Origin: Trichoplax adhaerens
Taxonomy: Eukaryota; Animalia; Placozoa
Direction of reading: 5' to 3'
DNA: 64,000 nucleotides
Assembly (NCBI RefSeq): GCF_000150275.1
Contig: NW_002060963.1
Coordinates: 230,627 to 294,626 of the forward strand
The notes under the pieces are model-generated. The model did no database searches and was not told the origin of the DNA. It saw only the letters and a list, made by a program, of their open reading frames with translations. The position numbers were made by a program, and so were the translations under genes. Numbering within the stretch: the stretch's first letter is position 1; every line of letters begins with the position of its first letter. Below, one piece after another: positions 3,001 to 54,046 of this stretch.

Positions 3001-3485
3001 TGGAAGGACATTTATGCGATTACTTTGGCCTTAGCTAACTAGAGTCTACTGTCTGTGTATATCAATCTAGCATAAGAGAGAGAGAGAGAGAGAGTGGAGG
3101 TGATACACCTTAACTACCCTATCAGTACATCGAGTTGATACATTTGCCTGTTACTAAGAACCATTTGATGATAGTAAGCCATTGAAAAATAACAATTGCA
3201 AATCAAGTTGAACGATTAGGATGGACAACACGACAAGAATTGTCACTGAACTATGCCATCTTGGCTATGTTAACATGAGTGTAATTGAGCAATATGATCG
3301 ATGACATAGAATAGACGACATCACTAACCATTGGGCGGCATTGGAGGCCTAGCAAACGGATTGAATGTCGGCATCGTCACTGGCATTCTAGCCATTGGTG
3401 GTGGTACACCAGCCATGGTGACTGGGGTCGCCGGTACATTGGATGTGGTAGGTGCATGGACTGGCCTGTGTTGAAAATTCGACAT
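1..3485 (-). CDS. RBM25: RNA-binding protein 25 (splicing factor; Pro-rich N-terminus + RRM), 5' part, multi-exon, continues beyond the left edge
   Basis: ATG at 3485 opens MSNFQHRPVHAPTTSNVPATPVTMAGVPPPMARMP (exon ends 3329, donor GTTAGT). Further exons at ~1786-1862 (AALRGAPAVMPPVPPGVGVPPHMMQ), ~1454-1556, ~1139-1228 (PKTTTVFVGNITEVATDTFIRQLLM), ~837-894 (KCGTVVSWKRIQGATGKLQ), ~656-748 (AFGFCEYADPEATLRALRLLHGLQVGEKELL), then IKVDEKNRKRLDEYL. This matches the RBM25 RRM signature TVFVGNI...WKRVQGASGKLQAFGFCEY. Confidence 0.93.
2568..2615. repeat. 48-nt imperfect palindrome (hairpin) in the first coding intron of RBM25
   Basis: Left arm ccatggactaccagaaatgactac versus reverse complement of right arm ccatagactactggaaatgattac: 20/24 match, no spacer. 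Confidence 0.75.
3076..3093. repeat. (GA)n microsatellite
   Basis: agagagagagagagagag directly visible. Confidence 0.85.
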
Positions 3486-3800: not shown

Positions 3801-4366
3801 GTAAGGTCTTCTTTTAATCAGTCTCTCCTACCGTCTGTGCCTAGCGTACTGGTACAGGCAACTGGTACCGCACTGGTACTGGGAACTGGTACCGTATGAG
3901 TACCCATTTTATGCAGCTTTTGGACGGTCCTGATTCAATGTAAGGTCTTCTTTTAGTCAGTCTCTCCTACCGTCTGTGCCTAGCGTACTGGTCCAGGCAA
4001 CTGGTACCGCACTGGTACTGGGAACTGGTACCGTACCAGTACCCATTTTATGCAGCTTTTGGACGGTCCTGATTCAATGTAAGGTCTTCTTTCAGTCAGT
4101 CTCTCCTACCGTCTGTGCCTAGCGTACTGGTACTGGCAACTGGTACCGTACCAGTACCCATTTTATGCAGCTTTTGGTCGGTCCTGATTCGATGTAAGCC
4201 TGTAAGGTCTTCTTTTAGTCAGTTTCTCCTACCGTCTGTGCCTAGCGTACTGGTACAGGCAACTGGTACCGTACTGGTACTGGGAATTGGTACCGTACCA
4301 GTCAGTACTCGCAACTGGCACCGCACCAGTACCCATTTTATGCAGCTTTTGGACGGTCCTGATTCG
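3801..4366. repeat. Minisatellite, 4 copies of a ~139-bp unit upstream of the RBM25 start codon
   Basis: Unit gtaaggtcttctttta(a/g)tcagtctctcctaccgtctgtgcctagcgtactggtac...acccattttatgcagcttttggacggtcctgattc starts at ~3801, 3940, 4079 and 4202. Copies 3 and 4 lose or gain internal ACTGGTAC sub-repeats. Confidence 0.95.
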
Positions 4367-34576: not shown

Positions 34577-37063
34577 GTGTTCTCGTTGTTACAATAAAGC
34601 AATGTATAATAACTATGGTGTAAATATGTTCCCGTAGTAATTTTAATTTGTTATGAAATCATTACAGTAGGTTCATGGAACATTTAAAAGCTATTTTTAT
34701 GGCGTTTCTCTTATACTAATGACAAGTTGTATTTTATGGTGTTGTCTTAAATGTTATGTTATGCTTTACATTTATGATATCTTTAGCTTCTCATAGCAAT
34801 GCACTTATGTAAATACTTCGGAGTTTGCGCTTGTATATAGCGTTCCTGAATGATCTCTTAGAGCAATAGATGAAATTCACCTAATTTTAAATTAAGACGC
34901 CCTTATTTTAGCTTGTATTAGGTTAAGCAACATTTGGTCTTAGTAATAAAGCACCCTACATTCGTATATTGAGATAATGACTAATGCGAAAGATCAGTTT
35001 ATGCGTATTTTAATATTACTGCTTTAGTTGATTGGATTGGCAATACGACTTTCATACCCATGTAATTAAAAGAGCATAATTTATATAGTGAACCGTGTAC
35101 ATTTATAATCATGAAGTCATGATGATAAAGCTGCAAGATTTAGCAAGGTTTCCTCCGTAATCAAATCTTTTCTTTCATTAGCTAAGATCTTTATGAAGTA
35201 CTATAGTTAGCTGTATTGTCTTTCTTAGCCGTTTTCAACATGTATCACGTAACTGTATCAAGGATAGGTTGCCTACGAATATTCTAGTTGCTGAAGACGA
35301 ATTAAATCTTATATGATATACACGCATTAGTCTTTCATGAGTCACAAGCTCTATAGAGGCACATAAAACAATTTCACGAACTTTATTTCAAAATAGTTCC
35401 CCGTTTTTCATAAAAAAAATGGTAAGTATTGAAATAATCCTAAGGTAATATAAATAAACGTAAAATACCAAATTATAACCTTTCTAACGGTTGACATAAG
35501 GGTACTTCATTGCTGCAATATCAAGTGTTTTGACATTGCAATTACTAATTTTGGAGGGTTGATGAGCAATAATATCGCGAGATTGTGCTTAGTACAAAAA
35601 CAATCACGCGCTAAGAGCAATTCAAGTTTACAAGGCACGTGTAAGTGTAAACAGGTTAGCACTCCAGGATAATACTGTATTATGTACGGTGTTAGAAATT
35701 ATTTAGACGAATTTAGATAATAAAGGGTTTAACTTCAAGCTGCCAAACAATGATGAAACGAGAATGCCGAAATAGATGTTAATAAGGCACCAATCCCTTT
35801 AGTCTCTGCAACATTTCTCAGTAGATTTTATGCTAGAATTGCTAAGCTAATTTCGGGGTCTGATACCTATATAGTAAGATTACAATAATTATACATTCTG
35901 GTGGATGCATCATGAAAATACGATGAGATCATTTACGCTGTGTTCTACAGTTATCGCTGCTACGTTCATACTCTGATAGCCCCTCGATTAATGGTATGCG
36001 TCCTGTCTTGAATGTCTTTGCATGAAAGTAGAAAAAAATTTACTTCGTTTTGTATTTATATTCTATTCTCTTAATCTTATGTACACTTAGGAAAATTAGT
36101 GAATATAGCGGTCATTTCGATTAAGATAAAGAAGACTATATTATTTCTTTGTTATTTATTTGCTTAAGTGATGACTTCAATTTTATGAGAATAAAAACGT
36201 AAATTTACTGTTAAAATTTGCCACTAACGTCTTAGATAAATAATAATCTAGGCTCTAGTCATCTACGTAGCTGACAGTATAATGAATAACAAATACATAG
36301 TGAGATTTAATAAAATTCTCTGCACTTTCAGAAGTGATCCTTCATTATGATAAGCTTAATAAAGTTTACGTTGGTATAACGATAAGAAAATAATAACGAG
36401 AGTTAATTACTTATACGAGATCTTGGTAAAACCTATACTTTGATCAGATATTACGATGACTCTTCATTGTAAAAATAATAGATACCTCACCAATTACAAT
36501 TACAATTATAATAGCCAGATAATCGTAGCATACTCGTAAATGAATTTATTTTACAATAATAAACTGGTGACATAGTTACAAGAATACCGAAATTAAGGGA
36601 TAATAAAGTATCTATATTTAATTATTACTAACAATCCAATTCCTGGTGTTTACGTTTTGGACTTGTTTTAAAGGGGTGTAAGCGAATATAACAATAGAAT
36701 TTGGAGCTGCTGTTAAAATTCTATAAACCAATTTTCCGATACGTTAGTCGGAATGATCTACTATTTACAATAAATCTTAGCTATTAATAAATGATAAACA
36801 TATATTTTAATATAATAAATCTGGTAAAAATCCTGTTTTTAATCTATTTGCAAAATACCATTCTCGCGTTATTATTTTACTAGAGTTAAGAATCTTATAG
36901 TAACCCATGTCTATAGAATTGTTGAAAGTTCTATCTTGTAATGATAACATACTTCTGTACTTTATATTAAAAGCCCTAAAATACCAGAATGTAACTGTCA
37001 CAAACTTAACTTGCGAAGTACTATCCTAAACTAATGATTACTTATTCCTATTTCCACTACACC

Positions 37064-37818
37064 TGGAGATCTACTGTGTGGTAGTCCTATACTACTTACA
37101 GTCACATAGTTGGCAGCTTATCTGTGTAGTCGAGAGTTAGTTCAACTACGATAGTAGCCTAAGTCAGTTTCTAATAACTCTTGATCGTTATCTGCACCTA
37201 GTTTATCCTTTTCAAAATTCTCGCTTATCTAGTAAAACTACTATCTTGGCGTTAGCAGTTCTTTGGATAATGTCAATCGCATTAGTTGGATTACCAATTA
37301 TTTATAGTATTAATCAACCGTCAATTAATCGTCTATATTCTAGTAACATTGCATGTTTGCCTTGCAATTTTAATAATCCATATTTATTAACGTGGCTATT
37401 GTGTTATGCTGGATTAACCTTCGTCGTTTAGATTTTTATTGCAATCATGTATGTCATAACTCTATCGACACTGGCAAATTCACGTAAAGAAGCTCATAGA
37501 CGTTTATCAAACACTGATAAAATTATTCGGGCTAAAATGATTACTATCATAGTAACGAATTTAATTTGTTGGCTACCATTATATGTAATATTAATTCGAG
37601 ATTTTGGTTCTGGATTAGACACGCATTCACTCCCATTTATTGCTGTGTTATCATTGCCACTAAATTCATGTATTAACCGGATTCTTTTTACACTCTTTAC
37701 AACTACTTTTATTGATTACATTAACTTGGTTATTGGAAAGTTAAATTGCTGTTCATGTTTAACATTCTTTCGATCAATTCATAAGTCAAATTCAAGGCAG
37801 TCAACTACAAGGGAGTAG
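37064..37818 (+). pseudogene. Decayed class A 7TM domain of LGR/RXFP/GRL101 type
   Basis: GDLLCGSPILLTVT*LAAYL (pre-TM1/TM1, in-frame TAG), then a jump to FLITLDRYLHLVYPF (end of TM3; most of TM1-TM3 missing). ECL2 SSNIACLP, in-frame TAG at 37429-37431, TM6 IIVTNLICWLPLY, TM7 LPLNSCINRILFT (NPxxY degenerated). Confidence 0.85.
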
Positions 37819-37921
37819 GTTAAGGCCTATTTCTAAAGTAAAGTGATTTATATATTTCTGAAGCCTTATTATATGCGATTTCTTTAACCATTAAATATTA
37901 ATATATATCTCAACGAATAAG

Positions 37922-39640
37922 AAACAATGTATAACAATTACAGTAGTCCTAATTTATCTGAGGTAATCCATTTTAAAAGATTCGCAATGTTCAAAATCAA
38001 GTATTTTACGCATTTGCTTTTGCCTAGTACGGTTATTCCGTATTTCTTACTTTAAACCATAAACTATCTTGGCTTTAGCGAGACTAATTTTAAAATCCTT
38101 TAGCAATATCTAACATAATCATAAATTTTATTCGTCTAGTACTTGCTTTAACTATTGTACAATCTGAACTGGATCAGTAGCGTTTACCTTACTTCATATC
38201 GTGACCATTACTAGAGCGAAAGTACGGTAGTGATTTTCATGCAATTTGCAAAACAAACGCATATGACAATTGCATGACATGAACAGCTCTTTCCTTATAG
38301 CATAAAGGCTAGAGTAAACTTTGCTAATACTTAAGGGAGATGTATTTCGATGAGTAATGAATTCGAATAGTCTGCTATTCTTATAGCTAGTATAATCACT
38401 AAAATTATTGAAAATTATATTACATTTATCCAAGATTTATACAGGGTATAGGCATATCATTTATTTATTGTACTTAATATTATCTATCACTAGTAGTACA
38501 GAATAGCCATGTTAAGTAAGATTTTTTGATTAGCTCATATGTACGTATAATTAACTTCGATGCAAGGATTACATCAAAGTCGAATTACCTCATAATTACA
38601 AAGCGAATCATTTCGGTTAGATGCAGTTTTACAACGTGAAAGATAGCTTGCTTTGGAAAAAGGAGATATTATTTTATACATACATCAAATCGTAAAACTG
38701 TGAATTAAAAAATATTTTTAGTTGTTCGTGGTACTGTGAAGGAAATGAATGTAGAGTCGAAATAGATGGTGTCAAGAAGCTATTTCTGAATATATTGTAG
38801 GTCCTATATTTTTAGTATTTATAGTGGATTAGGTACCGTTTGTATTCATGCGGTTGTATTTACAAGATATATTCTCTTTTCTGCAGCGTAACTTGTTATT
38901 AAGCAGATGCCACTGACATAATGCTACTGAGCAATTCCATTCGTTTGCAATCCAATTCCCTAACATCGCAGCAGATTTTTCATATTATTATTAAGATTAT
39001 ACAAGCAATCCAATCTTTGCACCTGAATAATATAGTCCATGGATCAATTGATACCGATGCTGTTGTTCTTCTTATCCCGCCAAAGGTATGTGAAAGCATG
39101 TTAAGGACAGATATTTGAAAATGCGACAGTTCTTAAATATTTAATTTTTCATTAGTTTATTTTTACTTTGATCATGTCCACAATTTGTGCAAATACAATG
39201 TAAATATTGTGTATTTCATTAACAATTTTTAGTGGGTAACAAATTTCAGAGATACAATTCTAGTTATTCGAGTATAATCCTCATTACGGATTAGTTGAAT
39301 TCCTATCACTATTTGTAAACGCTGTTATCTATCCTTTATAGTAATGACATGATATAGGTGATAACTGATTGCTTATTTAACTTTATATTTGGGAACTGAT
39401 TAACGCCTTATTAGACAAATTTTCAAAACGACAAATTAAAAAAATGATCTTCATGAAATATGCAGAGATCGATACCGTCAATTAATGAGTGCAGATATTT
39501 CTGATTTTGTGTTGCTACGCAATGAATTAATTTCATACTCCCAAACGCTGATCGATCAAATGAATAAGAGCCAATTGCGACTAGATAAAATGATACAATT
39601 TAACGAAGATATTAAATCTTGGAGATCGGTGAACGAGAAA
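37922..39640 (+). pseudogene. Protein-kinase-like (pseudokinase) domain exons directly 3' of the 7TM, with in-frame stops
   Basis: Phase-compatible exons 37922-37962, 38567-38796 (DYIKVEL...HFG*MQFYNVKDSLLWKKEILFYTYIKS*NCELKNIFSCSWYC) and 38887-39085 (FVTCY*AD...LTSQQIFHIIIKIIQAIQSLHLNNIVHGSIDTDAVVL), then ~39400-39640 (NALL/TNFQ...MSADISDFVLLRNEL). These resemble kinase subdomains II-VIb, VII and IX. Confidence 0.65.
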
Positions 39641-40367
39641 GTAGGTGTCAAGTTTAATAAACTGTATTAACTATACATAGTTAATTACTAACAACTAGTG
39701 CCTAGTGAAAGCTACAATGATAATAACTAAACCTTGAGTAACAAAAGTACATTCTAAGGTAGTAAAACAGTAATTACTGCCGTAAATTATTATTTTGAAA
39801 GTCCATAAGTAGCTGTACTGACGTACAGTAATTGAACTAAATGCTAAAATTATGACGAAGTTGTAATAGATTCTTTAATTGATGTTCATTAATCTAACTA
39901 ACATTAATCAAATTTAGTAACTCATCGTCAAAGGTGCCGTCAAGGTTTAATTACAGAAAAATAGAGAACCGAAGCAAATTCTAGCTTATCTGTGGATCAT
40001 TATTAGCAATAACTGAAAGGATTTCAAAGTCTACTCGGGGCCAAATGTACTAGATAGCTTTAATTTTTCATTCCCAATAATTAATCTCTGATGACATAGT
40101 ACCGTGAAAATTAGATCAGAAAATCGAGCCCAATAAAAGCGATGAAAGTAACTTGTCGCTCGAGTTCGTACTTTTCTTAGATGTAGTGTTAATGATGAGG
40201 TTAGCCTTTTTAATCTATAGTATAAATATTTGGTCAACATCTGGATACACCGACGGATAGTTATTTTCGTTAACGATTATATTTGTCATAGTGATTTTAC
40301 CATAGTTGTTTAGAGAGTAACTACTGTTTTCTACCTTCCAGCTGATATTGTACAGTCAGCTTAGGAT

Positions 40368-40630: not shown

Positions 40631-43600
40631 CTATTTAGGACAAAATCCATTAGGAATTATTCAAGCTGGTACTTTTAAACACTTGACCAAATTGCAAATA
40701 CTGTAAGCAATTCACTATGCTCACCTGAAAATTCGGTCAAACTTATGAGCGATAATATCTTGTGTGCTTACAAAAGTTTTAATACTTTAAATCATTACTA
40801 AAATTATTCGTATCTCAAATATTAATGCAGGAGCTTAAGTTATGACGAAATACATCATCTAGACGAAAAATGTTTCGAAGGATTAAACAATCTACAATAT
40901 TTGTAATATGCTTTAATCTCTATTGAGACTGTACTACAAGATTTGAGAATTTTATGATGTTTGATTATTAATGAAAAACTATAAATAATTAAAAATAAAA
41001 CTCACATCGTAAACCATGATCAACTTTTGTTTTAATCGGTAGAAAATTTACTGATAACCCTATTATTCAATTTCCGAAGTATGTCTTCAAACCGTTAAGA
41101 AGCTTGAAAACTCTGTAAGAGTAGTGATAGCATATAATTATATAAAAATAGTATCGTGCTGTGCTCAGTCAATATCACATATTTCGTTTGTGTCTTTGAT
41201 TTAATGAATTATTTGCTATAAAATAACTATCTGGCATTGATAATTCAGTATTTATAATACTTCAATCATTACGATCAAAGTAATCATAAAACTGAATTCT
41301 AATTCTAGAAACATACACGTACACGTACATCTTACCTAAACATCCTTGCACTAATTATGTAAATACAATTGTATACGTGAATCCTTTTCTTGATTTATAC
41401 ACTGCAAATTTAAGGTTTATAAGAATAGGCTACTTTAGTTAAACGGAATGCGCTAGTGTTCTAGCGGGCTTGAAATGTACAAGCTCTATATCACAGAAGC
41501 TGTATTAAAATTACTAGCGAAATCTTCATTTCTTAGCAGAATGTAAGACTGAGATAAGATTTATGAAAAACTGAGCGTCTTGTCATATTTGATACTTATC
41601 GCGGTTATCTTACCATGTTACAAATCAAATTTGTAGAGAAGAAAGTTAGTTACTACTACTAGGAATTATAATATAAGCATACTATTTGGACCTTCCTTCT
41701 TGATATCTACGTGTGATACCAATCGAAATATTGATGATCTCCCATCGTCAGCAGATCGTAATAACTATTAATCTTTCCTTAGACTAAACTATGAACCCCA
41801 AATTTTATTGCTAAATGCATTAATTATTATAAGTATATTTCGAGATAAGTTATCCTATAACAGCTATGCTATCGCCGTTATGTAAAAATTACTCTGAACG
41901 TGCTTAACTCTGATAACATTGTAATTTCAATTTCAGAATTATACTTACAACTAACCTGATCGACTTAGAACCGGAAACCTTGAAAGATTTACGACAGCTA
42001 CAGCATTTGTAAGTAAACTTTACTGTTGGACAATATTCACTCAATTCAATGGAAATACGCATACTATTTGCATATATTGAATTGATCTTGTGTTAAGTCT
42101 TGAAAAGCTGATCTTAATCTCTAAAATTACAATAGTACTGTATTTTTATAGTATAGAAAATAAAAGCATATTGATTAACCTATTTATCATTACTATAGTA
42201 TCTTTTATCGTATTTTAATTGTTAAAAAACTTAGGCTTGAGAGTACATAATCTTTTCTTACATAGCGAAATATTACTTTCAAAGCATATCCAATTTGAGG
42301 GATGGCTTTTGTTTTCTACAATTAAGTGTCTGGCTAATAGCTCTTTTTCTCGAGTACGCACTTTTTGATACTTAAAGCGGCTAAAACTTCTTGTAGAACT
42401 ATTGCTAATTCTTACTTACGGAGAATCCCTAATGGCACTTTTATGAATAATAAAGAACTGATCTATCTGTAAGCTAAACGTTTATGTAAATCGATACATC
42501 TATTTTCTACTAGAAATATTGAATACTATTTCATTATCAAGTCTTTGCATTAATATTTTTCAAGTTTTGTTCTCATTACAGAAATTTGGAAAGTAATAAA
42601 ATTAACTTTTTGAGCAATTATACCTTTTATGGTCTAAACAAGCTCCGCTTTTTGTAGGTTTAAGCTTAAATGAATCATTGTATCAGTGATTCACTGTCGA
42701 CTACAATTTTCTTTAGGTCATAATATGATCTACAGACCATTTTATGGAATTTTATATATATATATACTAGTACTTTTTATTGAATTATTCTGGATTAGAT
42801 TGAAGTAATCTTATAATTATTATTCTTTATTAATCTCTTCTGGTAATAATTATTTATAGACTACTTAATACTGCCCTAAAATTTGATTTAAAGAAAATTG
42901 GTTAATAACATTAAATACGACTATGCTTCATATAGAAATCTAAAGTTAAATCCTATTCAACATGTCATCAATAATCTCAATCTGGTGCTACCGATGCTAT
43001 CGACGCTGTAATTATTCCGAAAACTGTGTTACTAGTGATAATTTACCGTTACAGCAATATATACTTGGGGTTTTCATTTATACGTTTAATTATCAATTTA
43101 CCTTGTAAATTCCATAGCTCATATGAATTTTGTTTCTTTATCGGTGAAATAGATATATCAGCCAATTTCGTAATACTCGATCAGCCATCAAAGCTATGCA
43201 AAATATTTTACATTTGGAAACAATGTAATAATACGTTATATCATAACTTAGTACCAGATTGTAGATTATTAGCTATATTTAAGTAGATTTACTGCAGCGT
43301 AACTTACTAAATTTATTATAAGGTATAACTTTTAATAGTTCATAATCATAGACTGTACATAAAGATTCTATGTTTGAGTACAAATGACCATATACTGTAC
43401 CCTATAGGGTGCTGTGCCATTACTGATGCTATAGATAACAAGAATTGACATGTAACTCATATATTAAGGTATAGATAGTTCATCGTACTGTAGCTAGTAG
43501 GAAATGATATGTGCATAAATACCTTAGCTGTTGGTATAATAATTTGTAAAAGGTCAGTTGTAGTATATGTTGCTAGTAATAGTCCGAATACTTGTAAAAT

Positions 43601-46600
43601 AAATAGAACATTACCATACTGGTTGTAGCTGCAGATGTTTCGAAGAATATATAAGTAGGCAACTTTAGATTCTTTAGCAGTCTTTCTACTTATTTTTCTA
43701 GTAGTTGTAACCGGCTAGAGTAGAGCTGTGCGTACATGAAGTTTGTATAAAGATCTAATAAAGTTCTAATTTTCTACAAATTTTGAAAATTTTGAGATCG
43801 ATTTTATCATATAATATTTTTAAATCCAATTTATTTAAAGGTAAACTTATAATATCAGGTTTATAATAGACATGATTATTTTTTAGCTGTGACAGGAATA
43901 GTACAATATCTATTCATTGTAATACGATTGCTATAATTTCAGTTAGAATTTTAGAGCATCAGTATAGCAAATATACAGTATATTATATTGTAATTACTAT
44001 TATTATGTGGATAAGGGCTTGGTATGAAGATGCTAGTCTGATTTCGGCATTTAAACTCGCTTAAGATTTATTTGATTTGGCTAGGAATGTGGAGTTTGGT
44101 AACATGCGGGACTTAGGTTGCGATCTAATAGCTCAGCTACCGACTCTTCGTAAGATGTAAGTATCAAAACTACCTATAAACTAGTACGTTATTATTTCGA
44201 ATATAAAATTCTAATTCGTATTGAAGAGTAAAGTACTGACTAGAATGGGTAATCTATAGATTATGTAATGAATTTAGCCTACGTTATAGCTAATGATAAC
44301 ACTAAGAGTGTTCTTTCATTCGGTTTATTATATTTGTTACTTCTGCTATTTACAATATTAATAAAGACGTACCAGTAGTTAGATATCTGAGCTGAATACT
44401 GTGATAAAAAATATAACTTTACTGTTACAGCAACATTACTAAAATTCACTTTAAAATTTGCAACAATGTACGATTTTACACAGTAGAAGTTTGATGTTGA
44501 TTATTACATTTATGAGATTTAGCATCTTGTTACCGTTTTCAATACTACTAATAAATGTAATTTGAATTACATTTTAGCAACCTAAAGAATAATCAAATAG
44601 AAACTATTTGCCAAGAAACGTTTCAAAAGCAAATCAGACTAATCGAATTGTAAGCAAAATAAATTAAATTATTAACAGTAACTAAAGCACTTACGAATAT
44701 TACTGTATCTTTATTACTTATCCTGAGGTTTTATGCCAATAGGGACTATATCATGATAGCTTATCGGCTAATGATATTTATGCAGATCTAATAATACTAG
44801 ATATAATTTATTGATAACACGTAAATGATAATAAATATTAATATTGACGATCCACTTCTTGTACATTTTAGAGATTTATCGGCTAACCAGATAAGTGTCC
44901 TGTCAAACAAGACATTCTCTGCTCTGTCATATTTAAAAACCTTGTAAGCAAAGTCTGCTTGAATTAGTGTGATATTATTGCTGTCATGCAGTAGCTTAGC
45001 TCTATAACATGATTAATCCTAAGGAGTACGGTAGTCTAATATTATCCATATGCAAATCCAATAATAGCTAAAATTTTAAGGATTATAAATATATTTATCT
45101 CTTATATCGATATAATTCTCCTGAAAAAAACTGTACTAGCTTAGTGTATAAATTCGTATAAAGTTCTTAATAAAATTTATAGAGAAGTAAGAAGTTGGAG
45201 ATTTTACTAATACTTTTGCTATAATATATGAATAATTTCTAAAATTAATTTAGGAGATTAGCCTTTAATAGGATACAACAACTTTCGGTAGGGATATTTA
45301 CAGGGCTATATTCTTTGGAGAAGCTGTAAGTAAATTATTTGCTAATGTAGTTAATGATTAATCTGCAAAATCGACATGAATGAAGTCCATAGAAATGATT
45401 ATGTAATTTTTATCGTCAGCATTATTCTCTTTATCAATCAAATTAGCTCTTTACTAGTAGTAAGCAAGTACAGACACCGCAATACTTGTACTATTTTGAT
45501 ATCAATTTGTATTGCTAAAGTTAGTAAATACATGCAGTTTTTGATTGGTATTCTGCTTCTATGGCAACATTATAATTGATAAAAATAGTCAAATTGAGGT
45601 TTACTTTCGACATATTACGGGCCAGATCAATTATAATTATGCTAAAAACTTACGCGTGATGTAAATAAATTTAATTAGAGACTTGAGAAACAACGTTTTA
45701 GAATCAATTCCCGAAACTACATGCCATGGTCCATCTAAACTCTATCAAATGTAACTATTGATAATTCTGTTTTAAAATGTTTGTATTGCGAACGTTAAAT
45801 TATGCTACTGAAAAACATGGCTAGATAAAATTATGCAGTACGATATCCACATTCAATATTAATACAGTATTTTCGCTATAATTAAAATAGGATGCTATAA
45901 AATGTTCTTTCGTCATTGTACTGCATAACGTAAAGTAAAATATCATCGCACAAATATTTTACTCTACTTTGTACGTAAAATTCTTTTTTATAACTGTGAC
46001 ATTCATTAATTAATGCATCATCAATATTATAATTTTGTTGTGTGATGAATCATATGTTGACACCTAGCTACTAATTAACTAATATTAAATGTCATAGAAA
46101 TTGTGTTGTGATTCTGGCTATAATAAGTATGTAGACTGGGTTATTAATTAATTACTGTTTTTGCACCAACGAAGTTGGTGAGGATATATAAAGTCTCAAA
46201 GTTCTTAATTGAGAGTTAGTTACGTTAGTCGATGACAGATGGTTATCAGTTGCTAGTCGTAATTGTAAGTTGTGCGTTCAATCGGACATTTTAATAAAAT
46301 AGCTTCTAGAATAAAGTTTTGATCCTTAACGTGAGTAATCTATCGTCTAAGACTCGAATCTAAGTTTGGTTGATTAAAGAGTGCTTAGAGTTAGTTGCTT
46401 AGATAGTTAAGTCTACTTTAGAGGAAAGAATCCCGTTTAATTCTTGTGTTACAATCTCGGTTGTGACAATAACTAATTAAGAAAGTATAGGAAATAAGAA
46501 ATTTTTTCAGTTTGAAGTGCAATGTTGAAGTCCAAAGATTTATTCTTTACATTGATAAGCATAAATAGGCAGTAAAATAAGCGTAGAGCGTAGCTATAGT

Positions 46601-49600
46601 CGAAGGTCATAAGTTTTATAAAGCGATCATGCGTATTATCGGCAATTTATTATTTAGCTTTAATATAATTATGGACTGTTGTCTTTTATAAGTATCATTT
46701 GATACCTTCTACTTTTCGTCGCTGCTGTTTATTCTTTTACAGAAATTTGGATAAAAATCGTCTTAAGAATCTTAACGTAGAAATCTTGCACAACTGTTCG
46801 CAAAGTCTTACCGAATTGTAAATAAATACCAATTCATGGATTGCTATAGTAGATCAGCTTTCGTAAAATAAGGAATTATTCTATACAAAATATTTATGTT
46901 ATTCTTTTATATTCAAGTTCATAAATATAGTGTAACGGATTTTATTAAGCAGATACAATATCGCATTAGAATTAAGTGAAAATATCCACTATAATTTATT
47001 AATATACTAATTATTTAGCTTCTATAGATTTGATAAATTCATGAAGTAGTATCTGTGAGCTGTTGAGAAATTAATATTTCAGACTTTCGTAATGAATTTG
47101 TTTAAAAATATTTCTTACACTAGGTACGCATCTCAGAATTCTATTTCTTACCTTAATACAACATCACTATCAACCCTATCTGCTCTTAAGAAGTTGTAAG
47201 TTACTATCTCAGCAAATTTCTTTAATGTAACTCTTAAAAAAATTAGTACTATTCTTAAATTGTAACAGTTTGGCAAGAATCTCTTTTCAATTATTTGCTC
47301 TTAATTACAAAATCATGATTTCATTCTATTTTAATGTAATCCTAATTAAACTATTGTAAATGGTCACATAATATAAGGAGGAATTTACTTTCTGATTTCT
47401 CTCTAGATTATAATACAAACCTTAGCATAAAAAAAACTTTTATCAGTTGATTTAACGTACATTGCAGCATTGCCTTAGCTAAATATGTCAATTAGATCAC
47501 ATTCTATAATTGTAATCCTCGAAAAACATTGTGACTATCTAACAATGATATTTTATAACTCGAAGGAAGAGATACTATCAGTACGATTTTTACTTATCTA
47601 CGTAATATGGTTGTTGTAGCCGTTATATATGGACATTTTCCTACATATTACGGTATTGATCTACGAATAAGTTGACGTTTTCAAGTAACGAAATCAACAA
47701 CAATACCTTGTCTCGATCAGGATTGCACCACAATAAGAAATAACAGTACTTTCCTTCACTGATCTAACTAACCTATTTCATTACTTGCTAATAAATTAGA
47801 ACTAGTCTTTTAACTCTTGTTTCTGTACTAATATTCTTGATAATACTCTACTTGACATTTACCTAATAAGCAATTCTTTGATCAATGTATATATATATAC
47901 AATTTCACTTTCTCTAGTTATATATCTCAACTTGACATTTATCAGCAAGTTAACTACTTAACTAACCTTCGTTTTATGAATAGTTTCTTACATAGAGATT
48001 TTCTTTAATTAATTACGAAGTTATTCAATATTTCTAATAGTTACAACGTCAATAACTCAATTACACCTTTAAGAATATGCTAAGCAACACCATGCATGAG
48101 AATTAAAGCTTTACAAATAAATATTATATTTAAGATACTACCATTACTGATAATAATTTCGATATGCCTAGTCGGTATATACAAAATATACTTACACATA
48201 TATCATTTGATTAATCAACAAAGTATAAGTTTTGAGTATACTATGGTCAGGCACCTTGATAGCACCTCCAAGAAGTTGCTAAAAGTCAGTAAACAACACT
48301 TGAAGTGTTAATAAGGTTAACAGTTTGTCATAAGAATTCAATTAATATTCCTAATTATAAATCACCTGCACGCAAACAAATTTATAGCCATTAATTAATA
48401 CGCATCTGTCATATGTTCGCTATCGTCATAAAACATCAACTGATAGCAGTATTAATATAGAATTAAAAATAATTGATTTAGATGCAATTAATATTTGCAT
48501 TAGACATGAGAACATGTAATGAAATATTTACATTTATTTGTTGCTTGATTGTTTTTGGAAAGAACATTGGATTATAATCCTATTTCAATAATATCATACA
48601 ATGCCAACGCATCGATCAGACCGTTGCCTCAATTACACGAACTGTAAGATGATAAATAATCAAATTACACTATAAATAACTTCTTGTTTTGAGCTACGAG
48701 AAATAGCTCTTTATATTTACTACCTATGTTACTAGCATTAATTATTACCACCATTAGCTTTAAAATGATTACATTTACTAAAAATTATTAAAATTTACAT
48801 GATAATCAGAGCATTATGACTGTAGCAGAGAAATACATTCGAAGTTAATATCTTTATTTACCATAAATAAGATTTTCGAGCTCATAATATGCGATACTGT
48901 TTAACCGATCACGAAAATCCAAAATTTTTAGAAAATTACAGCTCTATTTGATCTTATACAAACATGATGTAAGCATGGCTCTATTTCTGCCGAATACGAT
49001 AACTAAATACCTCTAGAAAGAACTACTAGATTAATCTAAGTTTTCCAACTTATATACTTTTCGTAGTATTCGTAGCTACAGTCAGCATAGCAACATTCTA
49101 CTATGTTTTACACATTTTACAGCGGACTATCAGTAATCTAATATGGAAACTACTACGGTATTTACGTAGACATTGTTTCTATCAATCGGAGTACGATGGA
49201 CTAGCCATACTCTAATACCTGAATTACAGTTCTATTATTACGTCTAATCTTAACAATAACTCGACACCCTACTGTTTGTAGTCATCTATACTCTAACATA
49301 GAATCTTCCACTAAAGTCTTTGGTTATAAGCTACTAAATATATTTTAAGACAAATAAAGAAAGTCACGCTACCTTACATCATACTAAACATGGCTAATAG
49401 TCTACAATACTAATAATAAGTTATATTACACCATACAAGAGAAATATTTGATTAAAAATTTGGGGAAGGTATAAACAGTAATAGATTTAGAATACGGATA
49501 TTTCCAAATTTTCACGTAAGCAGCCCAATATTAGGTTTTAATGCAATCATTTAGTGTAAAACTTATTCCTAAGAATTTTACTAGTCTTTCAAACGTATTA

Positions 49601-51789
49601 CCTGGCCTTGTTTAATTTAAAAACACTTAAGCTTGATTACGTATTTATCCAATGTATTGTATTCATAAGCCAGAGTCTTTTATACAGAAAATGAACATTC
49701 GATTTCAATTATTACTGCCCTTATCTACTTATAGTTCGATTGATAACACCTTATTGAAAGAAATACCTAGAGAGTCTTTTCATCTATTCGAAAACGCAAT
49801 AGTAATGTAAGTAGCTAGTAAAATTTATGACTAAAAATTCTTTAACATTAAAAATACCAGGGAAAGTTAGCCTGTGATGAAATAGTTTTAATCGTACTTT
49901 TATTGATGAGATCAACTCGAAATAAACAGGTGAGGATATCATTTATGGAAAGTAATCCCATACATATCCGCATGATTAACTATATAACATATGCTCGTAT
50001 ACTTGATGTTTGGCAGCATTATAAGTGCGGCTAAATGTAACTATAAATTGAACAACGTATTAATAACTAAAATCTAATACTTTATTGTAAGAAATTATTT
50101 GTTTAATATATTCTCCTAGTGACAGCGATTTGTAATATTTTAAGTCACGAACTAAACAAAGAACTTAATAAGCGTTATTGGACTGAAGATCTGTTAATTT
50201 AACAGCTAACTTTACACACCAGATTATGTCCAATTAAATTATGATGAATAACTTAATGCAATGGTATTATTATTGTTTAGGAAATGCAATTCCGCTAACT
50301 TTTCCAGTGATAACGGAGAATCTTTATCTGTCCTTTCAAACTTGCAAACATTGTAAATATTTCGTTTCTTTCATTCCTATTGTAAATATTTCCTGTATTT
50401 TGGTAGTTAACGCACTACATCAATTGATAATTATAATCGGTATGAAAGGTCCCAAAATTTAAAATTCTGAGTTAAAATTGCATTTACAGCAATAAAATCT
50501 TACATGACGTAACCATAGATGATATATTCCATTTAAACATATTGTAATTCGATTTTATTGATTTAAGAAATTTTAATTTATAATCTACCTCAATTATCAT
50601 ATTACGCAATCAGAATTATTGCTGGAAGTCAAATCCACCCTAACTATACATTTAGTCATCATCTATCATTGACATTTCTGTGAGTAAAATAGTTATATTG
50701 TTTAGGTATTGATAAGACGTGTAATGTAACTTATTATTGGATTGTAGATTATCAGCGATGCTAGTATGATATACTGCAGCGTGGCTTACTAAATTTATTA
50801 TAAGACATATTTCCTAGCTTATAATCATAGATCATAAATGAAGATGCCAGAGTACAGATGGCTATATAAATTAGAGTGTTAAGTCATTATTGATGTTAGA
50901 GATACAAAGAACTGAAATGTAACTCACTTACTAAGACATAGATAGCTCACTGTACTATGGCTTGTAGGAAATGATGCTTGCATAAATACTGTAGCTGCTA
51001 CTATAATAAATTTTAAATAGTCCACCAAGGTATATGTTGCTAATAATAAGATAATACTTGCAAACTAAGGTAGAACGTTGCCATGCTGATTACAGCTTCA
51101 GATGGTACGAAGAATATAAAGTTTGGCAATTTTACATTATTTAGTAGCTCTGTCTGTGTCTTTCTGGTGGTTGCATTTTACTAGAGTAGAGCAGTATTAA
51201 ATATGTTTGTATAAAGATTGAATAAAATTTTAATTTTCTGTAAAGTTTGAAAATTCGTAATCTACGTATTTCATCTGTCAATGATAGTAGTTATTATCTA
51301 CGAGCTAATATATGACAGAACTAGACAATAGACATTATATCAATTATAAATGAATTTTAAATTATTTTCTTCTTTCCTAGAATGATAAACAACTTGATGA
51401 CTCGAAATTTTATAATCAGAAGAGAAATATTTCAAGGCTTGATTAAGTTAAAATACTTGTGAGTATCAGAATTACGCTGAATGCAAAGTTTGACTATTAC
51501 TAATATTGATATTGCTGGCATAATCTGTAACATAGATACCTTAGTTTTAACTATATTCAAGCACTCAAGAATGATAGCTTCCCTTCTCTTCCTTCTCTTT
51601 ATGAATTGTACGTGCAGTATTCATTTTATTTTTTAATATTGATAAGTATTAATTGGATCACAAATATATTAAATTAATATTTGATATTTGAATTTTACGC
51701 TTGTGCTTGTTTCGTAGGCAATTGAAAGCTAATAATATTTCTACAATCGAACCGTACAGCTTTATTGGATTATCAAATTTAAGAAAATT
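40631..51789 (+). CDS. Large extracellular-type leucine-rich-repeat region (~23 single-LRR exons), probably the ectodomain of an LGR-like receptor; both ends hidden by gaps, possibly pseudogenic
   Basis: AG-exon-GT cassettes, mostly 72 nt and all phase 2/2. Examples: 40631-40702 YLGQNPLGIIQAGTFKHLTKLQIL; 40831-40902; 41043-41114; 41465-41542; 41937-42008; 42397-42468; 42582-42653 NLESNKINFLSNYTFYGLNKLRFL; 42936-43007; 43153-43224; ~44086; ~44578; ~44872 DLSANQISVLSNKTFSALSYLKTL; ~45254; ~45679; ~46743; ~47124; ~48562; ~49736; ~50281; ~50614; ~51381; ~51536; 51718-51789 QLKANNISTIEPYSFIGLSNLRKL. Confidence 0.85.
43257..43790. repeat. Dispersed intronic repeat, copy 1 (~530 bp)
   Basis: Colinear with 50740-51255. 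Shared blocks: gattgtagatta, ctgcagcgt..cttactaaatttattataag, tgtaactca, gtaggaaatgat, gcataaatac, tatatgttgcta, gaagaatata, ctagagtagagc, gtttgtataaagat, tttgaaaatt. Confidence 0.85.
50740..51255. repeat. Dispersed intronic repeat, copy 2 (~515 bp)
   Basis: Same orientation and shared blocks as 43257-43790; clearly diverged. Confidence 0.85.
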
Positions 51790-52459: not shown

Positions 52460-53725
52460 TAGTTCGTAATTTTGAAATATAATATCGATTTCTAGTTTTA
52501 GAGAATTTTTGTAGATTTACTTAGCTTCAAGAGACAATCATAGGAACATTTAGTTATATTTATTATCTAGTACGTGGTAATTGTACATTCCAATAAGTAC
52601 CAAAATAAAGTGAGAGTGGACATATGGAAAATAGTATTAAAACGTAATACTTTTATCAATAAATTCCATAACTTCAGTTTTAAAGCTCTGCATAAAAATT
52701 TTGCTTATGTAATTTCGATGTCTCACTCTTGAACCGTATGTGCCGGTAGAGTTTCGAATGGAACATACACATACTAAGAACTTTACCTGCCGCTGTTACA
52801 TTTTTAGAGTCTTCTACTTTGCAATAGTACTAATATCAGAATCACAACAGTTACAAGTCTTCAATTCTATTATTCATTCTAAATATGTCACCTTAGTTTC
52901 TACCTCATCTTGTTTAAATAGTAAAGTCTGCGGCTACAACATTGTAACGCTTACTACATGGAGTGAGTTGTGTTAGGAAGTCGAAATTTCCTAACTGATT
53001 TACTATGCTTAATCATTAATATAATTTATAGTGTCTCTATCATAGACTACTCAAGAAAGACTTTAAAAAAGCCGTTTCTAGTAATCCATGTCTGCATGCT
53101 TATTTGATGACTAAATGGAGACATCTATTTCTGCTTTGAAACTATCATCTTTGAGCTTAGTTTTAGACGGCTGTCCTAATTTATACTTTGCGACAAAAAA
53201 AGTTAAAGCGAGTGTCTACTAGTCACTACTGACTAAAATACACTCTTTTACTACACATTAAATACAGTCAGCAAAGTATCGTAAAAATAGAACTTTTGTT
53301 AGTTGGAAGCAACTGCAGCTTTTCACGTACACTACTAAACTCAAAATGTTCCTGTTTATTTGGGAACCGTCTAACTTGCAAATAATAAGTACTATTATTA
53401 TTACATCATTAAAGCTGGACCCACGGCAAAATAATAGAATATTATAATATTATTATAATAATCATTATTACATAAGAGAAATAAATAGCAAATAAGAAAG
53501 ACCGTCAGGAGAGACATCTCGGACTGAGATGTTCCTCATTATATAGCTTTTCTATTAATAAATTTTTTTAACCTATTGCTCATACTTGATCTTAATCTAA
53601 GAATGTATGTCATCTAGCTCAACTATCATTAGCTAGAACTCAAATCGTCTTGCTGCCACTATCGACTCGTAATAACGTTCGATGTCAAATATGTAATAAA
53701 TTATCACGAGTAATATCTCGTTAAG

Positions 53726-54046
53726 GCATTACTTACCTTAACTAGCACTACTAATATGGATATTTTCCATATTAGCTACTACCGTGCTATTCAATTATCT
53801 TAACGGCAAGGTACCACCGCAACAATAGCACATCTAACACAATGAATATCCGGTTTTAAAATATAGTAATAATGGATATTGTAGTAAGCATTACTTACCT
53901 TACCTAGCACTACAACTATGGATGTTTCCATATTAGCTACTACTGTACTATTCAAATTATCTTAACGGTAAGGTACCGCCGCAACAATAGCACATCTAAC
54001 ACAATGAATGTCCTGTTTAAGACATGGTGATAATTGATATTGTAGA
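53726..54046. repeat. Tandem duplication, 162-bp unit, 2 copies
   Basis: gcattacttacctta.ctagcactac...ccatattagctactac...aaggtacc.ccgcaacaatagcacatctaacacaatgaat...gatattgtag starts at 53726 and 53888. Confidence 0.92.

What the first reader, a model, noticed from the sequence alone, without database searches (positions are those of the whole stretch)
37064..39640. Apparent GPCR-kinase fusion: an LGR-type 7TM receptor with a C-terminal pseudokinase domain
Seen: about 100 nt after the 7TM tail, three + strand exons with mutually compatible phases (37922-37962, 38567-38796, 38887-39085) and a further segment at ~39400-39640 translate to a kinase-fold pattern. It shows an alphaC-like LLWKKEILFY, KNIFSCSW (subdomain IV), hinge FVTCY, alphaE IIIKIIQAIQSLHLNNIVHGSIDTDAVVL (HRDL replaced by HGSI), a possible TNF in place of DFG, and ADISDFVLLRNEL (subdomain IX-like). 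Established: LGRs and rhodopsin-class GPCRs in well-studied animals carry no intracellular kinase domain, and loss of the HRD aspartate marks pseudokinases such as the kinase-homology domain of receptor guanylyl cyclases. Inference: this is a dead copy of a lineage-specific [LDLa]-LRR-7TM-pseudokinase receptor family, and the neighbouring LRR genes may be other members. Caveat: the 7TM ORF ends in TAG at 37816-37818 next to donor-like GTAGGT/GTTAAG, and the junction phase only fits if an indel is assumed.
Basis: partly seen in the sequence, partly recalled or inferred. Interest (0 to 1): 0.85.

Follow-up and report, generated by a model that had tools for sequence, protein, structure and literature searches.

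The report
Dead LGR receptor–pseudokinase gene copy
This stretch of the Trichoplax adhaerens genome is a broken duplicate of a real gene family in which a hormone-receptor-type (LGR) G-protein-coupled receptor is spliced in frame to a catalytically dead kinase-like domain, a design I found described in no paper on animal rhodopsin-class receptors.

Summary
The genome is Trichoplax adhaerens.

- **The window copy is dead.** Window 37153-40016 (+) is an unprocessed, 5'-truncated pseudogene. It has 7 premature in-frame stops, 2 frameshifts, a lost splice acceptor and a largely deleted linker exon.
- **The parent family is real.** At least 14 loci share three exons of conserved size (230, 199 and 249 nt) that encode a kinase-like domain of about 235 aa.
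- **The fusion is transcribed.** In the intact neighbour 12.5 kb beyond the window's end, RNA-derived contigs from two runs give canonical GT..AG joints, all in frame. The chain runs 7TM exon, 68-nt linker exon, three kinase-like exons, terminal exon.
- **Database proteins agree.** Two Trichoplax sp. H2 proteins (747 and 896 aa) carry LRR, 7TM and the kinase-like domain in one ORF.
- **The fold is a kinase fold.** Two AlphaFold models match only protein kinases in the PDB, and one paralogue's middle exon passes Pfam's PK_Tyr_Ser-Thr cut-off.
- **The domain looks catalytically dead.** The glycine loop, the HRD aspartate, the catalytic asparagine and the DFG aspartate are missing, yet dN/dS is 0.24-0.40.

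Other agents of this scan reported the same family at other loci.

The parts
36996..37109 (-). Inverted fragment of the sequence that lies just upstream of the 7TM exon in paralogue L018. It marks the rearrangement that cut off the 5' part of the gene.
   Evidence: blastn, 82.6% identity over 115 nt, in reverse orientation to L018:5161-5275.
37153..37814 (+). Remnant of the large 7TM exon, running from the DRY motif of TM3 to the C-tail. The LRR ectodomain, TM1, TM2 and most of TM3 are missing. Lesions: TAG at 37429-37431, the NPxxY proline changed to arginine, and an extra T at 37791/37792 that shifts the frame into TAG 37816-37818.
   Evidence: Pfam 7tm_1. 85% aa identity to residues 161-374 of the L020 7TM exon. 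82.6% identity to P0116 residues 262-468. Stops and the insertion.
37815..37816 (+). Conserved splice donor GT of the 7TM exon. It is homologous to L020 4216-4217, which is phase 1 in intact copies.
   Evidence: Alignments A6 and A8. The homologous donor is used in RNA contigs of run X6.
37942..37962 (+). Remnant (last ~21 nt plus the conserved donor) of the 68-nt linker exon. Its acceptor and 5' two-thirds were removed by a deletion of about 100 nt.
   Evidence: Alignment A6 against L020:4407-4474 and L018. The exon borders in L020 come from RNA joints 4215>4407 and 4474>5497.
38567..38796 (+). Kinase-like exon K1 (N-lobe: beta strands, alphaC-like W-E-K-E motif, beta4-5). It is 230 nt and ends in phase 2. 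Stops: TAG 38618-38620 and TAA 38693-38695.
   Evidence: tblastn, 67.6% identity to L020 K1. Acceptor CAAG| and donor |GTAGGT are visible. Stops.
38887..39085 (+). Kinase-like exon K2 (hinge, alphaD, alphaE, degenerate catalytic loop H-G-S-I-D-T-D in place of HRDLKxxN, beta7-8). It is 199 nt. Stop: TAA 38900-38902.
   Evidence: Pfam PK_Tyr_Ser-Thr E 0.014 at profile positions 88-135. 76-79% identity to intact paralogues. Stop.
39393..39640 (+). Kinase-like exon K3 (DFG-equivalent L-L-D-K-F, short activation-segment remnant, alphaF-like helix). The acceptor AG is mutated to GG (39391-39392). There is a 1-nt deletion near 39428, then TAA at 39437-39439. The donor |GTAGGT after 39640 is conserved.
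   Evidence: Alignment A5, tblastn against P0116, frames and stops.
39921..40016 (+). Terminal exon remnant (conserved C-terminal tail). It carries a premature TAA at 39948-39950. The natural stop is TGA 40014-40016.
   Evidence: tblastn to P0116 residues 719-747, 65.5% identity. Translation and stops. The homologous exon L020:7024-7119 is joined to K3 in RNA contigs of runs X6 and X15.

Best explanation
Window 37153-40016 (+) is an unprocessed pseudogene. It arose by tandem duplication in Trichoplax adhaerens, keeps its introns and has lost its 5' end. Its parents are placozoan LGR-type (relaxin-receptor/GRL101-like) rhodopsin-class GPCR genes.

In intact members the gene runs as follows:
1. 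Exons for a leucine-rich-repeat ectodomain.
2. One large exon holding the hinge and all seven helices.
3. A 68-nt linker exon.
4. Three exons (230, 199 and 249 nt) for a kinase-fold domain of about 235 aa.
5. A short terminal exon.

All are spliced in frame into one mRNA. This is shown by RNA contigs for the neighbouring copies L020/L021 and by Trichoplax sp. H2 protein models.

The kinase-like domain keeps the fold and the alphaC glutamate. It lacks the glycine-rich loop, the HRD aspartate, the catalytic asparagine and the DFG aspartate. The lobe after alphaF is shortened. It is therefore most likely a non-catalytic pseudokinase.

Inferred, not shown: in the living proteins this tethered domain sits under the receptor's cytoplasmic face. 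There it would work as a ligand-controlled scaffold, dimerisation module or allosteric module, not as an enzyme. This would be comparable in logic to the kinase-homology domain of receptor guanylyl cyclases or JAK JH2.

The window copy itself cannot make such a protein. It has lost the ectodomain and TM1-TM2 and most of TM3, and it carries seven premature stops, two frameshifts, a dead acceptor and a mostly deleted linker exon.
For: **Organism and locus**
- TRIADDRAFT gene names and contig sizes identify the organism.

**Homology through exons and introns**
- blastn to L020 gives 70-89% identity from 37168 to 40367. The other copies match likewise.

**Lesions**

**Family**
- K1-K2-K3 exon triplets occur at 14 or more loci with conserved exon borders.

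**One transcript**
- Run X6 has zero depth in introns, and X15 is an RNA library.
- Their contigs give GT..AG joints on L020 at 4215>4407, 4474>5497, 5726>5813, 6011>6490 and 6738>7024.
- The 11 odd letters at the first joint are exactly paralogue L021's sequence before the same donor.
- The phases are compatible and every exon is open.

**One ORF in databases**
- P0116 (747 aa), P0165 (896 aa), P0003 (697 aa), P0006 and P0012.

**LGR type**
- The best solved relatives of the TM6-TM7 tail are RXFP1 and then TSHR.
- Beyond the Trichoplax paralogues, the named sequence relatives of the 7TM are mostly GRL101-like.
- LRR_8 plus 7tm_1 are found in P0116 and P0165.

**Kinase fold**
- L012 K2 scores 24.4 bits against PK_Tyr_Ser-Thr, above the 23.1 cut-off.
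- P0003 residues 483-572 match at E 2.4e-4.
- Profile searches of PDB sequences hit MAPKAPK3, PAK, MST, IRE1 and CDKL3.
- All eight remote hits of the K2 profile that I scanned, drawn from the ranks below the family's own proteins in the 1.8-billion-protein library, are true kinases.
- The AF2 model of P0002 has pLDDT 71. Its Foldseek top hits are all kinases at probability 1.0, with VIA Z 8.6-10.3.
- The AF2 model of P0001 has pLDDT 73 and pTM 0.72. It gives at least 500 matches at E<=1e-3, and all 50 listed are kinases, the best at E 8e-7.

**Dead motifs**
- See the alignments.

**Purifying selection**
- dN/dS is 0.24-0.40 among intact copies, and 0.42-0.46 for pairs that include the window copy.
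Against: - The joints come from short Logan contigs, not from one long read. No single molecule was seen to run from the LRR exons to the terminal exon, and contigs can mix close paralogues. The first joint is from L021, not L020.
- Two JGI models keep the parts apart. TRIADDRAFT_61684 holds the 7TM and the start of K1. TRIADDRAFT_61685 holds the kinase-like domain alone. TRIADDRAFT_61227 is a 7TM-only model.
- Pfam support for the kinase fold is weak for most members. P0116, P0165 and P0001 give nothing at E<=0.1. K1 and K3 alone give no Pfam hit.
- TM-scores to kinases are only 0.36-0.50.
- The scaffold mechanism is inference only.
- I could not test whether the window copy is transcribed.
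Confidence: 0.88

Rival explanations
1. The kinase-like exons belong to a separate downstream gene. The apparent fusion is an annotation or read-through artefact.
For: JGI split one locus into TRIADDRAFT_61684 and TRIADDRAFT_61685, and modelled TRIADDRAFT_61227 as 7TM only. P0001 and P0002 are stand-alone models of the kinase-like domain.
Against: - Spliced RNA contigs join the 7TM exon's conserved phase-1 donor to the linker exon and then to K1, in frame, with GT..AG ends.
- TRIADDRAFT_61684 itself already runs from the 7TM into K1.
- The Trichoplax sp. H2 model RDD39592.1 merges the two JGI halves.
- 7TM sequence lies just upstream of K1 in every locus where I fetched enough flank.
Confidence: 0.04
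2. The resemblance to kinases is chance or compositional, and the C-terminal domain has another fold.
For: - Most single-sequence Pfam scans are below threshold.
- TM-scores are 0.36-0.50.
- The profile also gave spurious TALE-repeat hits.
Against: - Independent lines all point only to kinases. These are a Pfam hit above the cut-off for L012 K2, HMM hits covering the N-lobe through the catalytic loop in PAK, CDKL3 and MAPKAPK3, and library hits that are bona fide kinases.
- Two separate AF2 models were used. Every listed Foldseek match to either is a protein kinase, and the better one (P0001) gave at least 500 matches at E<=1e-3.
Confidence: 0.03
3. The window copy is still a working gene, and the lesions are assembly errors or are bypassed by alternative splicing.
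For: - The K exons keep 63-76% identity to L020 (57-59% to P0116), and their splice donors are intact.
- The assembly has N gaps nearby.
Against: - There are seven premature stops, two frameshifts, an AG>GG acceptor and a deletion of about 100 nt in the linker exon.
- Everything upstream of TM3 is missing and an inverted fragment abuts the break.
- This is far more than sequencing error would give in 2.9 kb.
- dN/dS is higher than among intact copies.
Confidence: 0.03
4. At family level, the domain is not dead. It would bind nucleotide or catalyse phosphotransfer (or another reaction) by a non-canonical mechanism, as WNK, CASK or SelO do.
For: - The alphaC glutamate is invariant.
- A lysine stands at the beta3 position in 7 of 10 copies.
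- One member has an aspartate at the DFG position (G-D-F-S in P0001).
Against: - There is no glycine-rich loop.
- The HRD aspartate and the catalytic asparagine are replaced in all copies.
- The DFG aspartate is not conserved, and the C-lobe is truncated.
Confidence: 0.1

Closest known systems
LGR type C / GRL101-like and relaxin-family receptors (RXFP1/2), rhodopsin-class GPCRs with an LRR ectodomain
   Same: - They share an LRR ectodomain, a cysteine-rich hinge and a 7tm_1 core with DRY and NPxxY motifs.
- The best solved match of the TM6-TM7 tail is RXFP1, followed by TSHR.
- Beyond the Trichoplax paralogues, the named relatives of the 7TM are mostly GRL101-like.
- The family probably belongs to the 41 Trichoplax-specific LGRs counted by Hauser et al. 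2022 (PMC9545775).
   Different: - Known LGRs end in a short cytoplasmic tail. These carry a kinase-fold domain of about 235 aa plus a tail exon.
- No LDLa module was found.
- The LGR review does not use the word kinase at all.
GPCR-kinase fusions: GPCR-TKL/K and GPCR-TK of choanoflagellates and sponges, and GPCR-bigrams (GPCR-PIPK, GPCR-TKL) of oomycetes and amoebozoans
   Same: They share the overall architecture: a 7TM domain followed in the same protein by a C-terminal kinase-fold domain. Such fusions are thought to have arisen repeatedly (PMC12716839).
   Different: - Here the 7TM is a metazoan rhodopsin-class LGR with an LRR ectodomain.
- Here the kinase-like domain lacks all catalytic motifs.
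[quoted passage not shown]
- No kinship between the domains was tested here.
Kinase-homology domain of receptor guanylyl cyclases, and other receptor-tethered pseudokinases (JAK JH2)
   Same: Each is a catalytically dead kinase fold tethered to a receptor's cytoplasmic side, and each lacks the HRD aspartate. The logic of a regulatory or scaffold module is the same. This comparison is from my own knowledge and was not tested.
   Different: - Those receptors are single-pass and have an effector domain behind the pseudokinase.
- Here the receptor is a 7TM, and no cyclase or other effector domain follows.
- No specific sequence relationship was found. The nearest kinases differ by method: IRE1, ULK, PAK, MAPKAPK3 and IRAK4.
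Unprocessed (duplicated) pseudogenes in tandem gene arrays
   Same: The window copy keeps its introns, with 70-80% identity to the paralogues' introns. It lies in a tandem cluster on the same contig and has accumulated stops, frameshifts and deletions.
   Different: Nothing unusual. This part is ordinary.

Membership tests
Rhodopsin-class GPCR (Pfam 7tm_1) | Significant match to the 7tm_1 profile | tested here: met
   - Window 37141-37428: 36.5 bits against a cut-off of 30.5.
- Window 37432-37815: 23.3 bits, covering the last third of the profile.
- Intact L020 exon: 93.2 bits.
Rhodopsin-class GPCR (Pfam 7tm_1) | All seven helices with DRY and NPxxY motifs, in an open frame | tested here: not met
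   - In the window copy only TM3 (from DRY) to TM7 remain.
- TAG sits at 37429, and NPxxY reads N-R-x-x-F.
- The feature is met in the paralogues L020, P0116 and P0165.
LGR (leucine-rich-repeat GPCR), type C / GRL101-like | LRR ectodomain N-terminal to the 7TM in the same protein | tested here: met
   For the family, P0165 and P0116 have LRR_8 and LRR_4 plus 7tm_1. For the window copy, the ectodomain is lost.
LGR (leucine-rich-repeat GPCR), type C / GRL101-like | LDLa module(s) at the N-terminus | tested here: not met
   There is no PF00057 hit in P0165 or P0116. P0116 is a partial model, so an LDLa further upstream is not excluded for that gene.
Eukaryotic protein-kinase-like fold | Profile or structural match to protein kinases over both lobes | tested here: met
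   - PK_Tyr_Ser-Thr scores 24.4 bits, above the 23.1 cut-off, for L012 K2.
- HMM hits to PAK4/6 and CDKL3 span the N-lobe to the catalytic loop.
- Two AF2 models match only kinases: Foldseek probability 1.0 with best E 8e-7, and VIA Z up to 10.3.
- The window K2 alone is below the cut-off, at E 0.014.
Catalytically active protein kinase | Gly-rich loop, beta3 Lys, alphaC Glu, HRD Asp, catalytic Asn and DFG Asp | tested here: not met
   - No GxGxxG loop is present.
- The beta3 Lys is present in 7 of 10 copies.
- The alphaC Glu is kept.
- HRD reads H/Y-G-x in all ten copies.
- The catalytic Asn is replaced by A, S or N variably.
- The DFG Asp is present in one copy only.
GPCR-kinase fusion proteins (GPCR-TK, GPCR-TKL/K, GPCR-bigrams) | 7TM and kinase-fold domain in one ORF and one transcript | tested here: met
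   For the family, the evidence is the RNA joints and the database ORFs P0116, P0165 and P0003. For the window copy the frame is broken, so no fusion protein can be made.
GPCR-kinase fusion proteins (GPCR-TK, GPCR-TKL/K, GPCR-bigrams) | Common descent of the 7TM or kinase domain with the described families | not tested
   No tree was built. The 7TM here is LGR-type, unlike the described families according to PMC12716839.
Receptor guanylyl cyclase (kinase-homology domain) | Guanylate cyclase catalytic domain behind the pseudokinase, on a single-pass receptor | tested here: not met
   Pfam scans of P0003, P0006, P0116 and P0165 show no cyclase domain. The receptor is a 7TM.
Unprocessed pseudogene | Introns retained, disabling lesions present, intact paralogues exist | tested here: met
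   Intron homology is 70-80%.

The most novel reading that the evidence does not exclude
Placozoa would have a working receptor class of 14 or more genes in which a rhodopsin-class LGR is covalently coupled to a kinase-fold module. That would be the first such fusion described for a non-sponge animal and for a rhodopsin-class GPCR. It would have arisen independently of the sponge, choanoflagellate and oomycete fusions. It would signal, at least in part, through the tethered pseudokinase (scaffolding, dimerisation or allosteric gating of G-protein access) and not only through G proteins. The window copy is one of its dead members.
Probability: 0.5. Interest if true: 0.75.

Novelty: new variant of a known kind. 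Interest (0 to 1): 0.6.

Why it matters
The pseudogene in the window is ordinary in itself. What matters is the family it comes from.

- **It fills a stated gap.** GPCR-kinase fusions are known from oomycetes, amoebozoans, choanoflagellates and sponges. The most recent survey says they were not recovered in other metazoan lineages and that none has been characterised functionally (PMC12716839). Here an animal outside the sponges has a whole expanded family of them. They are built on the hormone-receptor (LGR) branch of rhodopsin-class GPCRs, and their kinase fold has lost catalysis yet stays under purifying selection.
- **Why surveys missed it.** Pfam does not see the domain in most members, and JGI split some of the genes into separate models.
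- **It is testable.** How a 7TM receptor can drive a tethered kinase-fold module can now be studied in a culturable animal.
- **It bears on an open puzzle.** The fused domain may be one clue to why Trichoplax, an animal without neurons, keeps 46 LGRs.

Tried and rejected
- **Pfam on single exons.** K1 and K3, from the window and from paralogues, gave no kinase hit, only noise such as MucB_RseB and DUF6985.
- **The search for homologous proteins.** Queries with the kinase part of P0003 and with P0002 returned only the queries themselves. This reflects word-index and length limits and is not evidence of absence.
- **TALE artefact.** The profile of the kinase-like domain gave top hits to TALE repeat proteins in the PDB. 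These are sums of many 2-bit matches to one short L-T-P-E-x-V motif, so I rejected them.
- **Neighbouring LRR exons.** tblastn of the LRR parts of P0165, P0116 and P0120 against the window gave no hit in the LRR-exon array at 40631-51789. The idea that those exons belong to this family remains untested. One-repeat exons are too short for tblastn.
- **Apparent deletion in L018.** A seeming internal deletion in the 7TM of L018 is only an assembly gap of Ns.
- **Kinase group.** I could not assign one. The nearest kinases differ by method (IRE1/ULK/GAK, IRAK4/SYK/WNK, PAK/MST/MAPKAPK3). The TKL/TGF-beta-receptor origin proposed in another note is neither supported nor refuted.
- **Joined exons.** Exons were searched one by one by reference, and the database proteins P0001, P0002, P0003, P0116 and P0165 stood in for the joined product. 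dN/dS counts were summed per exon without joining.
Full report
**What is in the window**

The window is AT-rich (about 30% G+C) eukaryotic DNA. It is contig C1394:230627-294626 of a 105.6-Mb, 1414-contig genome. Database hits name the organism as Trichoplax adhaerens (TRIADDRAFT models).

On the + strand, 37141-37815 translates to the second half of a rhodopsin-type receptor. Pfam 7tm_1 scores 36.5 and 23.3 bits for the two pieces, which are split by an in-frame TAG at 37429-37431.

The piece 38903-39115 gives a weak Pfam hit to PK_Tyr_Ser-Thr (E 0.014) and Pkinase (E 0.035). The hit falls at profile positions 86-135, which is where alphaE and the catalytic loop belong.

**A family, and an intact neighbour**

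I searched the whole genome with that piece and got 22 matches. Six are at 74-79% identity: three more on C1394, two on C1288 and one on C1357. A tail of matches at 33-44% identity lies on other contigs.

Mapping the exons of the nearest intact copy onto all fetched loci showed the same triplet at 14 or more loci. That copy is L020 (C1394:304000-313999), whose 7TM exon lies 12.5 kb beyond the window's end. The triplet is K1 (76 codons plus 2 nt), K2 (1 nt plus 66 codons) and K3, and the K2 borders are identical everywhere.

The window copy is homologous to L020 through exons and introns, from 37168 to 40367, at 70-89% identity. It is therefore an intron-bearing duplicate, not a retrocopy.

**The window copy is dead**

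Compared with L020, L018, L019, L021 and the Trichoplax sp. H2 protein P0116, the window copy carries these lesions:

| Part | Lesion |
|---|---|
| Upstream of TM3's DRY motif | Everything is lost: the LRR ectodomain, TM1, TM2 and most of TM3. An inverted 115-nt fragment abuts the break at 36996-37109 |
| 7TM exon | TAG at 37429 |
| 7TM exon | The NPxxY proline is changed to arginine |
| 7TM exon | An extra T at 37791/2 throws the frame into TAG 37816.
| Linker exon | A deletion of about 100 nt leaves only ~21 nt (37942-37962) of the 68-nt exon |
| K1 | TAG at 38618 and TAA at 38693 |
| K2 | TAA at 38900 |
| K3 | Acceptor AG>GG at 39391-2, a 1-nt deletion near 39428, and TAA at 39437 |
| Terminal exon (39921-40016) | TAA at 39948 |

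dN/dS over K1+K2 is 0.42-0.46 for pairs that include the window copy. Over K1-K3 it is 0.24-0.40 among intact copies.

**Are the 7TM and the kinase-like exons one gene?**

Three lines say yes.

- **Exon phases.** In L020 the 7TM ORF has a strong donor (GGA|GTGAGT) in phase 1 at 4215|4216. K1 starts in phase 0, so a direct join fails. A 68-nt exon in between (2 nt plus 22 codons) fixes the phase.
- **RNA contigs.** I laid the contigs of four public runs on L020:1500-7400.
  - Runs X1 and X4 cover the introns evenly and behave as DNA.
  - Run X6 has zero depth in the introns, and X15 is a declared RNA library.
  - X6, backed by X15 at the last two joints, gives joints with GT..AG ends at 4204(+11 letters)>4407, 4474>5497, 5726>5813, 6011>6490 and 6738>7024.
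  - The 11 letters at the first joint are exactly what paralogue L021 has before the homologous donor. That contig therefore comes from L021 and uses the same donor.
  - All exons are open and in phase, and the terminal exon adds 32 codons.
  - An X6 contig also joins the 7TM exon at 3161 to upstream sequence. That sequence encodes the end of the LRR region as in TRIADDRAFT_61227.
- **Database proteins.** Several carry the whole chain in one ORF.
  - P0116 (Trichoplax sp. H2, "GRL101-like, partial", 747 aa) reads LRR, hinge, 7TM, linker exon, K1, K2, K3 and tail, exon for exon as the joints predict.
  - P0165 (RDD39592.1, "Relaxin receptor 2", 896 aa) does the same for another locus.
  - TRIADDRAFT_60495 (697 aa), P0006 and TRIADDRAFT_60497 also combine 7TM and kinase-like parts.
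  - JGI split one locus into TRIADDRAFT_61684 (7TM plus the start of K1) and TRIADDRAFT_61685 (kinase-like domain). The H2 model merges them.

Caveat: the joints come from short contigs. No single long molecule was seen.

**Is it a kinase fold?**

Single exons are too short for most searches. Even so, the evidence points one way:

- K2 of L012 passes Pfam's PK_Tyr_Ser-Thr cut-off, at 24.4 against 23.1 bits and E 2e-5.
- P0003 matches profile positions 51-137 at E 2.4e-4.
- A profile of ten K2 exons, searched against 1.84 billion proteins, found the family first. All eight lower-ranked, remote hits that I scanned are bona fide multi-kinase proteins.
- Profiles of the whole domain hit MAPKAPK3, PAK4/6, MST1/2, CDKL3, KSR, IRE1 and LRRK2 among PDB sequences, at E 1e-4 to 5e-2. 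These alignments run from the N-lobe to the catalytic loop.
- An AlphaFold2 model of P0002 has pLDDT 71.3. Its listed Foldseek matches are all kinases at probability 0.96-1.00, with VIA-align Z 8.6-10.3 over 145-170 residues.
- An AlphaFold2 model of P0001 has pLDDT 73.3 and pTM 0.72. It gives at least 500 matches at E<=1e-3, and all those listed are kinases, the best at E 8e-7.
- TM-scores are only 0.36-0.50. One reason is that the domain ends soon after a long alphaF-like helix and has no alphaG-alphaI.

I take the kinase fold as established and its kinase group as unresolved.

**Is it dead?**

Across the family:

- The catalytic loop reads H/Y-G-x-I-x-T/M-D/H-A/S in place of HRDLKxxN. There is no catalytic aspartate and no asparagine.
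- The DFG position reads G/S-x-F-S/T, with an aspartate in one member only.
- No glycine-rich loop is present.
- The alphaC glutamate (W-E-K-E) is invariant.
- A beta3-like lysine is present in 7 of 10 copies.

This is the signature of a pseudokinase. Non-canonical nucleotide binding cannot be excluded.

**What kind of receptor?**

- The TM6-TM7 tail matches RXFP1 best and then TSHR among solved structures.
- Beyond the Trichoplax paralogues, the named sequence relatives of the 7TM are mostly GRL101-like LGRs.
- P0116 and P0165 carry LRR_8 and LRR_4 repeats but no LDLa.
- Pfam sees no kinase domain in P0116, P0165 or P0001 at E<=0.1. This explains why domain-based surveys missed the architecture.

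**Literature**

- Hauser et al. 2022 count 46 LGRs in T. adhaerens, 41 of them placozoan-specific. The review never uses the word kinase (PMC9545775).
- Garcia De Las Bayonas and King 2025 describe GPCR-TKL/K and GPCR-TK fusions in choanoflagellates and sponges. They state that such fusions were not recovered in other metazoan lineages, with T. adhaerens in their data set. They also state that none has been functionally characterised (PMC12716839).
- A 2025 preprint on placozoan GPCRs mentions neither LGRs nor kinases.
- The gene identifiers occur in no searchable paper.
- UniRef's automatic name for TRIADDRAFT_61685 is "Protein kinase domain-containing protein". The domain has therefore been flagged by machine but, as far as I can see, never discussed.
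- The search library is incomplete, since it lacks most subscription journals.

**Mechanism**

Shown:
- the gene architecture;
- splicing into one frame;
- the kinase fold;
- the loss of catalytic residues;
- purifying selection on the kinase-like exons.

Inferred: the domain is tethered behind TM7, after the receptor's own C-tail and a 23-residue linker exon. It would act as a non-catalytic scaffold, dimerisation module or allosteric gate that responds to ligand-driven movement of the 7TM bundle.

I give the window-copy-as-pseudogene reading about 0.9. I give the family's single-transcript fusion about 0.85. I give the scaffold mechanism no more than about 0.4.

**Relation to other notes of this scan**

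Notes s1-764952 and s1-764983 describe the intact copy that I used as L020. Follow-up reports s1-760346 and s1-749458 reached the same family-level conclusion at other loci, with about 16 genes and two tandem copies further along this contig. The scan has therefore seen this family before on other DNA. My tests were run independently on this window and on L020.

Exons went in one by one by reference, and database proteins stood in for the joined product.

Noticed in passing
L020:4986-5435 (C1394:308985-309434), in the intron between the linker exon and K1: A ~450-bp insertion is absent from paralogues L017 and L019 and is present inverted elsewhere in L021. Its contig depth is up to 100,000 in the DNA-like run X1. 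X1 also holds a form that skips it (joints 4986>5435 and 4986>5455). It is probably a very high-copy, polymorphic small transposable element.
   Followed up: partly
L022:6983-7075 (C1400), within TRIADDRAFT_60495: The JGI model inserts a 31-residue exon between K1 and K2. No other family member or H2 model has it. It may be a mis-called or alternative exon.
   Followed up: no
TRIADDRAFT_61684 / TRIADDRAFT_61685 (contig of 660745 bases): Two adjacent JGI gene models are the two halves of one LGR-pseudokinase gene. The Trichoplax sp. H2 protein RDD39592.1 (896 aa) merges them. UniRef already labels the second half "Protein kinase domain-containing protein".
   Followed up: partly
window 36996-37109: A 115-nt fragment matches, in reverse orientation, the sequence just upstream of the 7TM exon in paralogue L018. 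This suggests an inversion or deletion event at the 5' break of the pseudogene.
   Followed up: partly
window 53088-54191 versus L020:9240-10000: Sequence that lies about 2 kb downstream of the L020 gene is 87-88% identical to window sequence 13 kb downstream of the pseudogene. The ~11-kb LRR-exon array at 40631-51789 therefore sits as extra material inside one duplication unit.
   Followed up: no
alignment A7, K2 exon (the L-T-P-E-x-V-x-x-I motif): The motif at the start of alphaE resembles the TALE repeat core closely enough to produce spurious summed hits to TALE proteins in a PDB profile search.
   Followed up: yes
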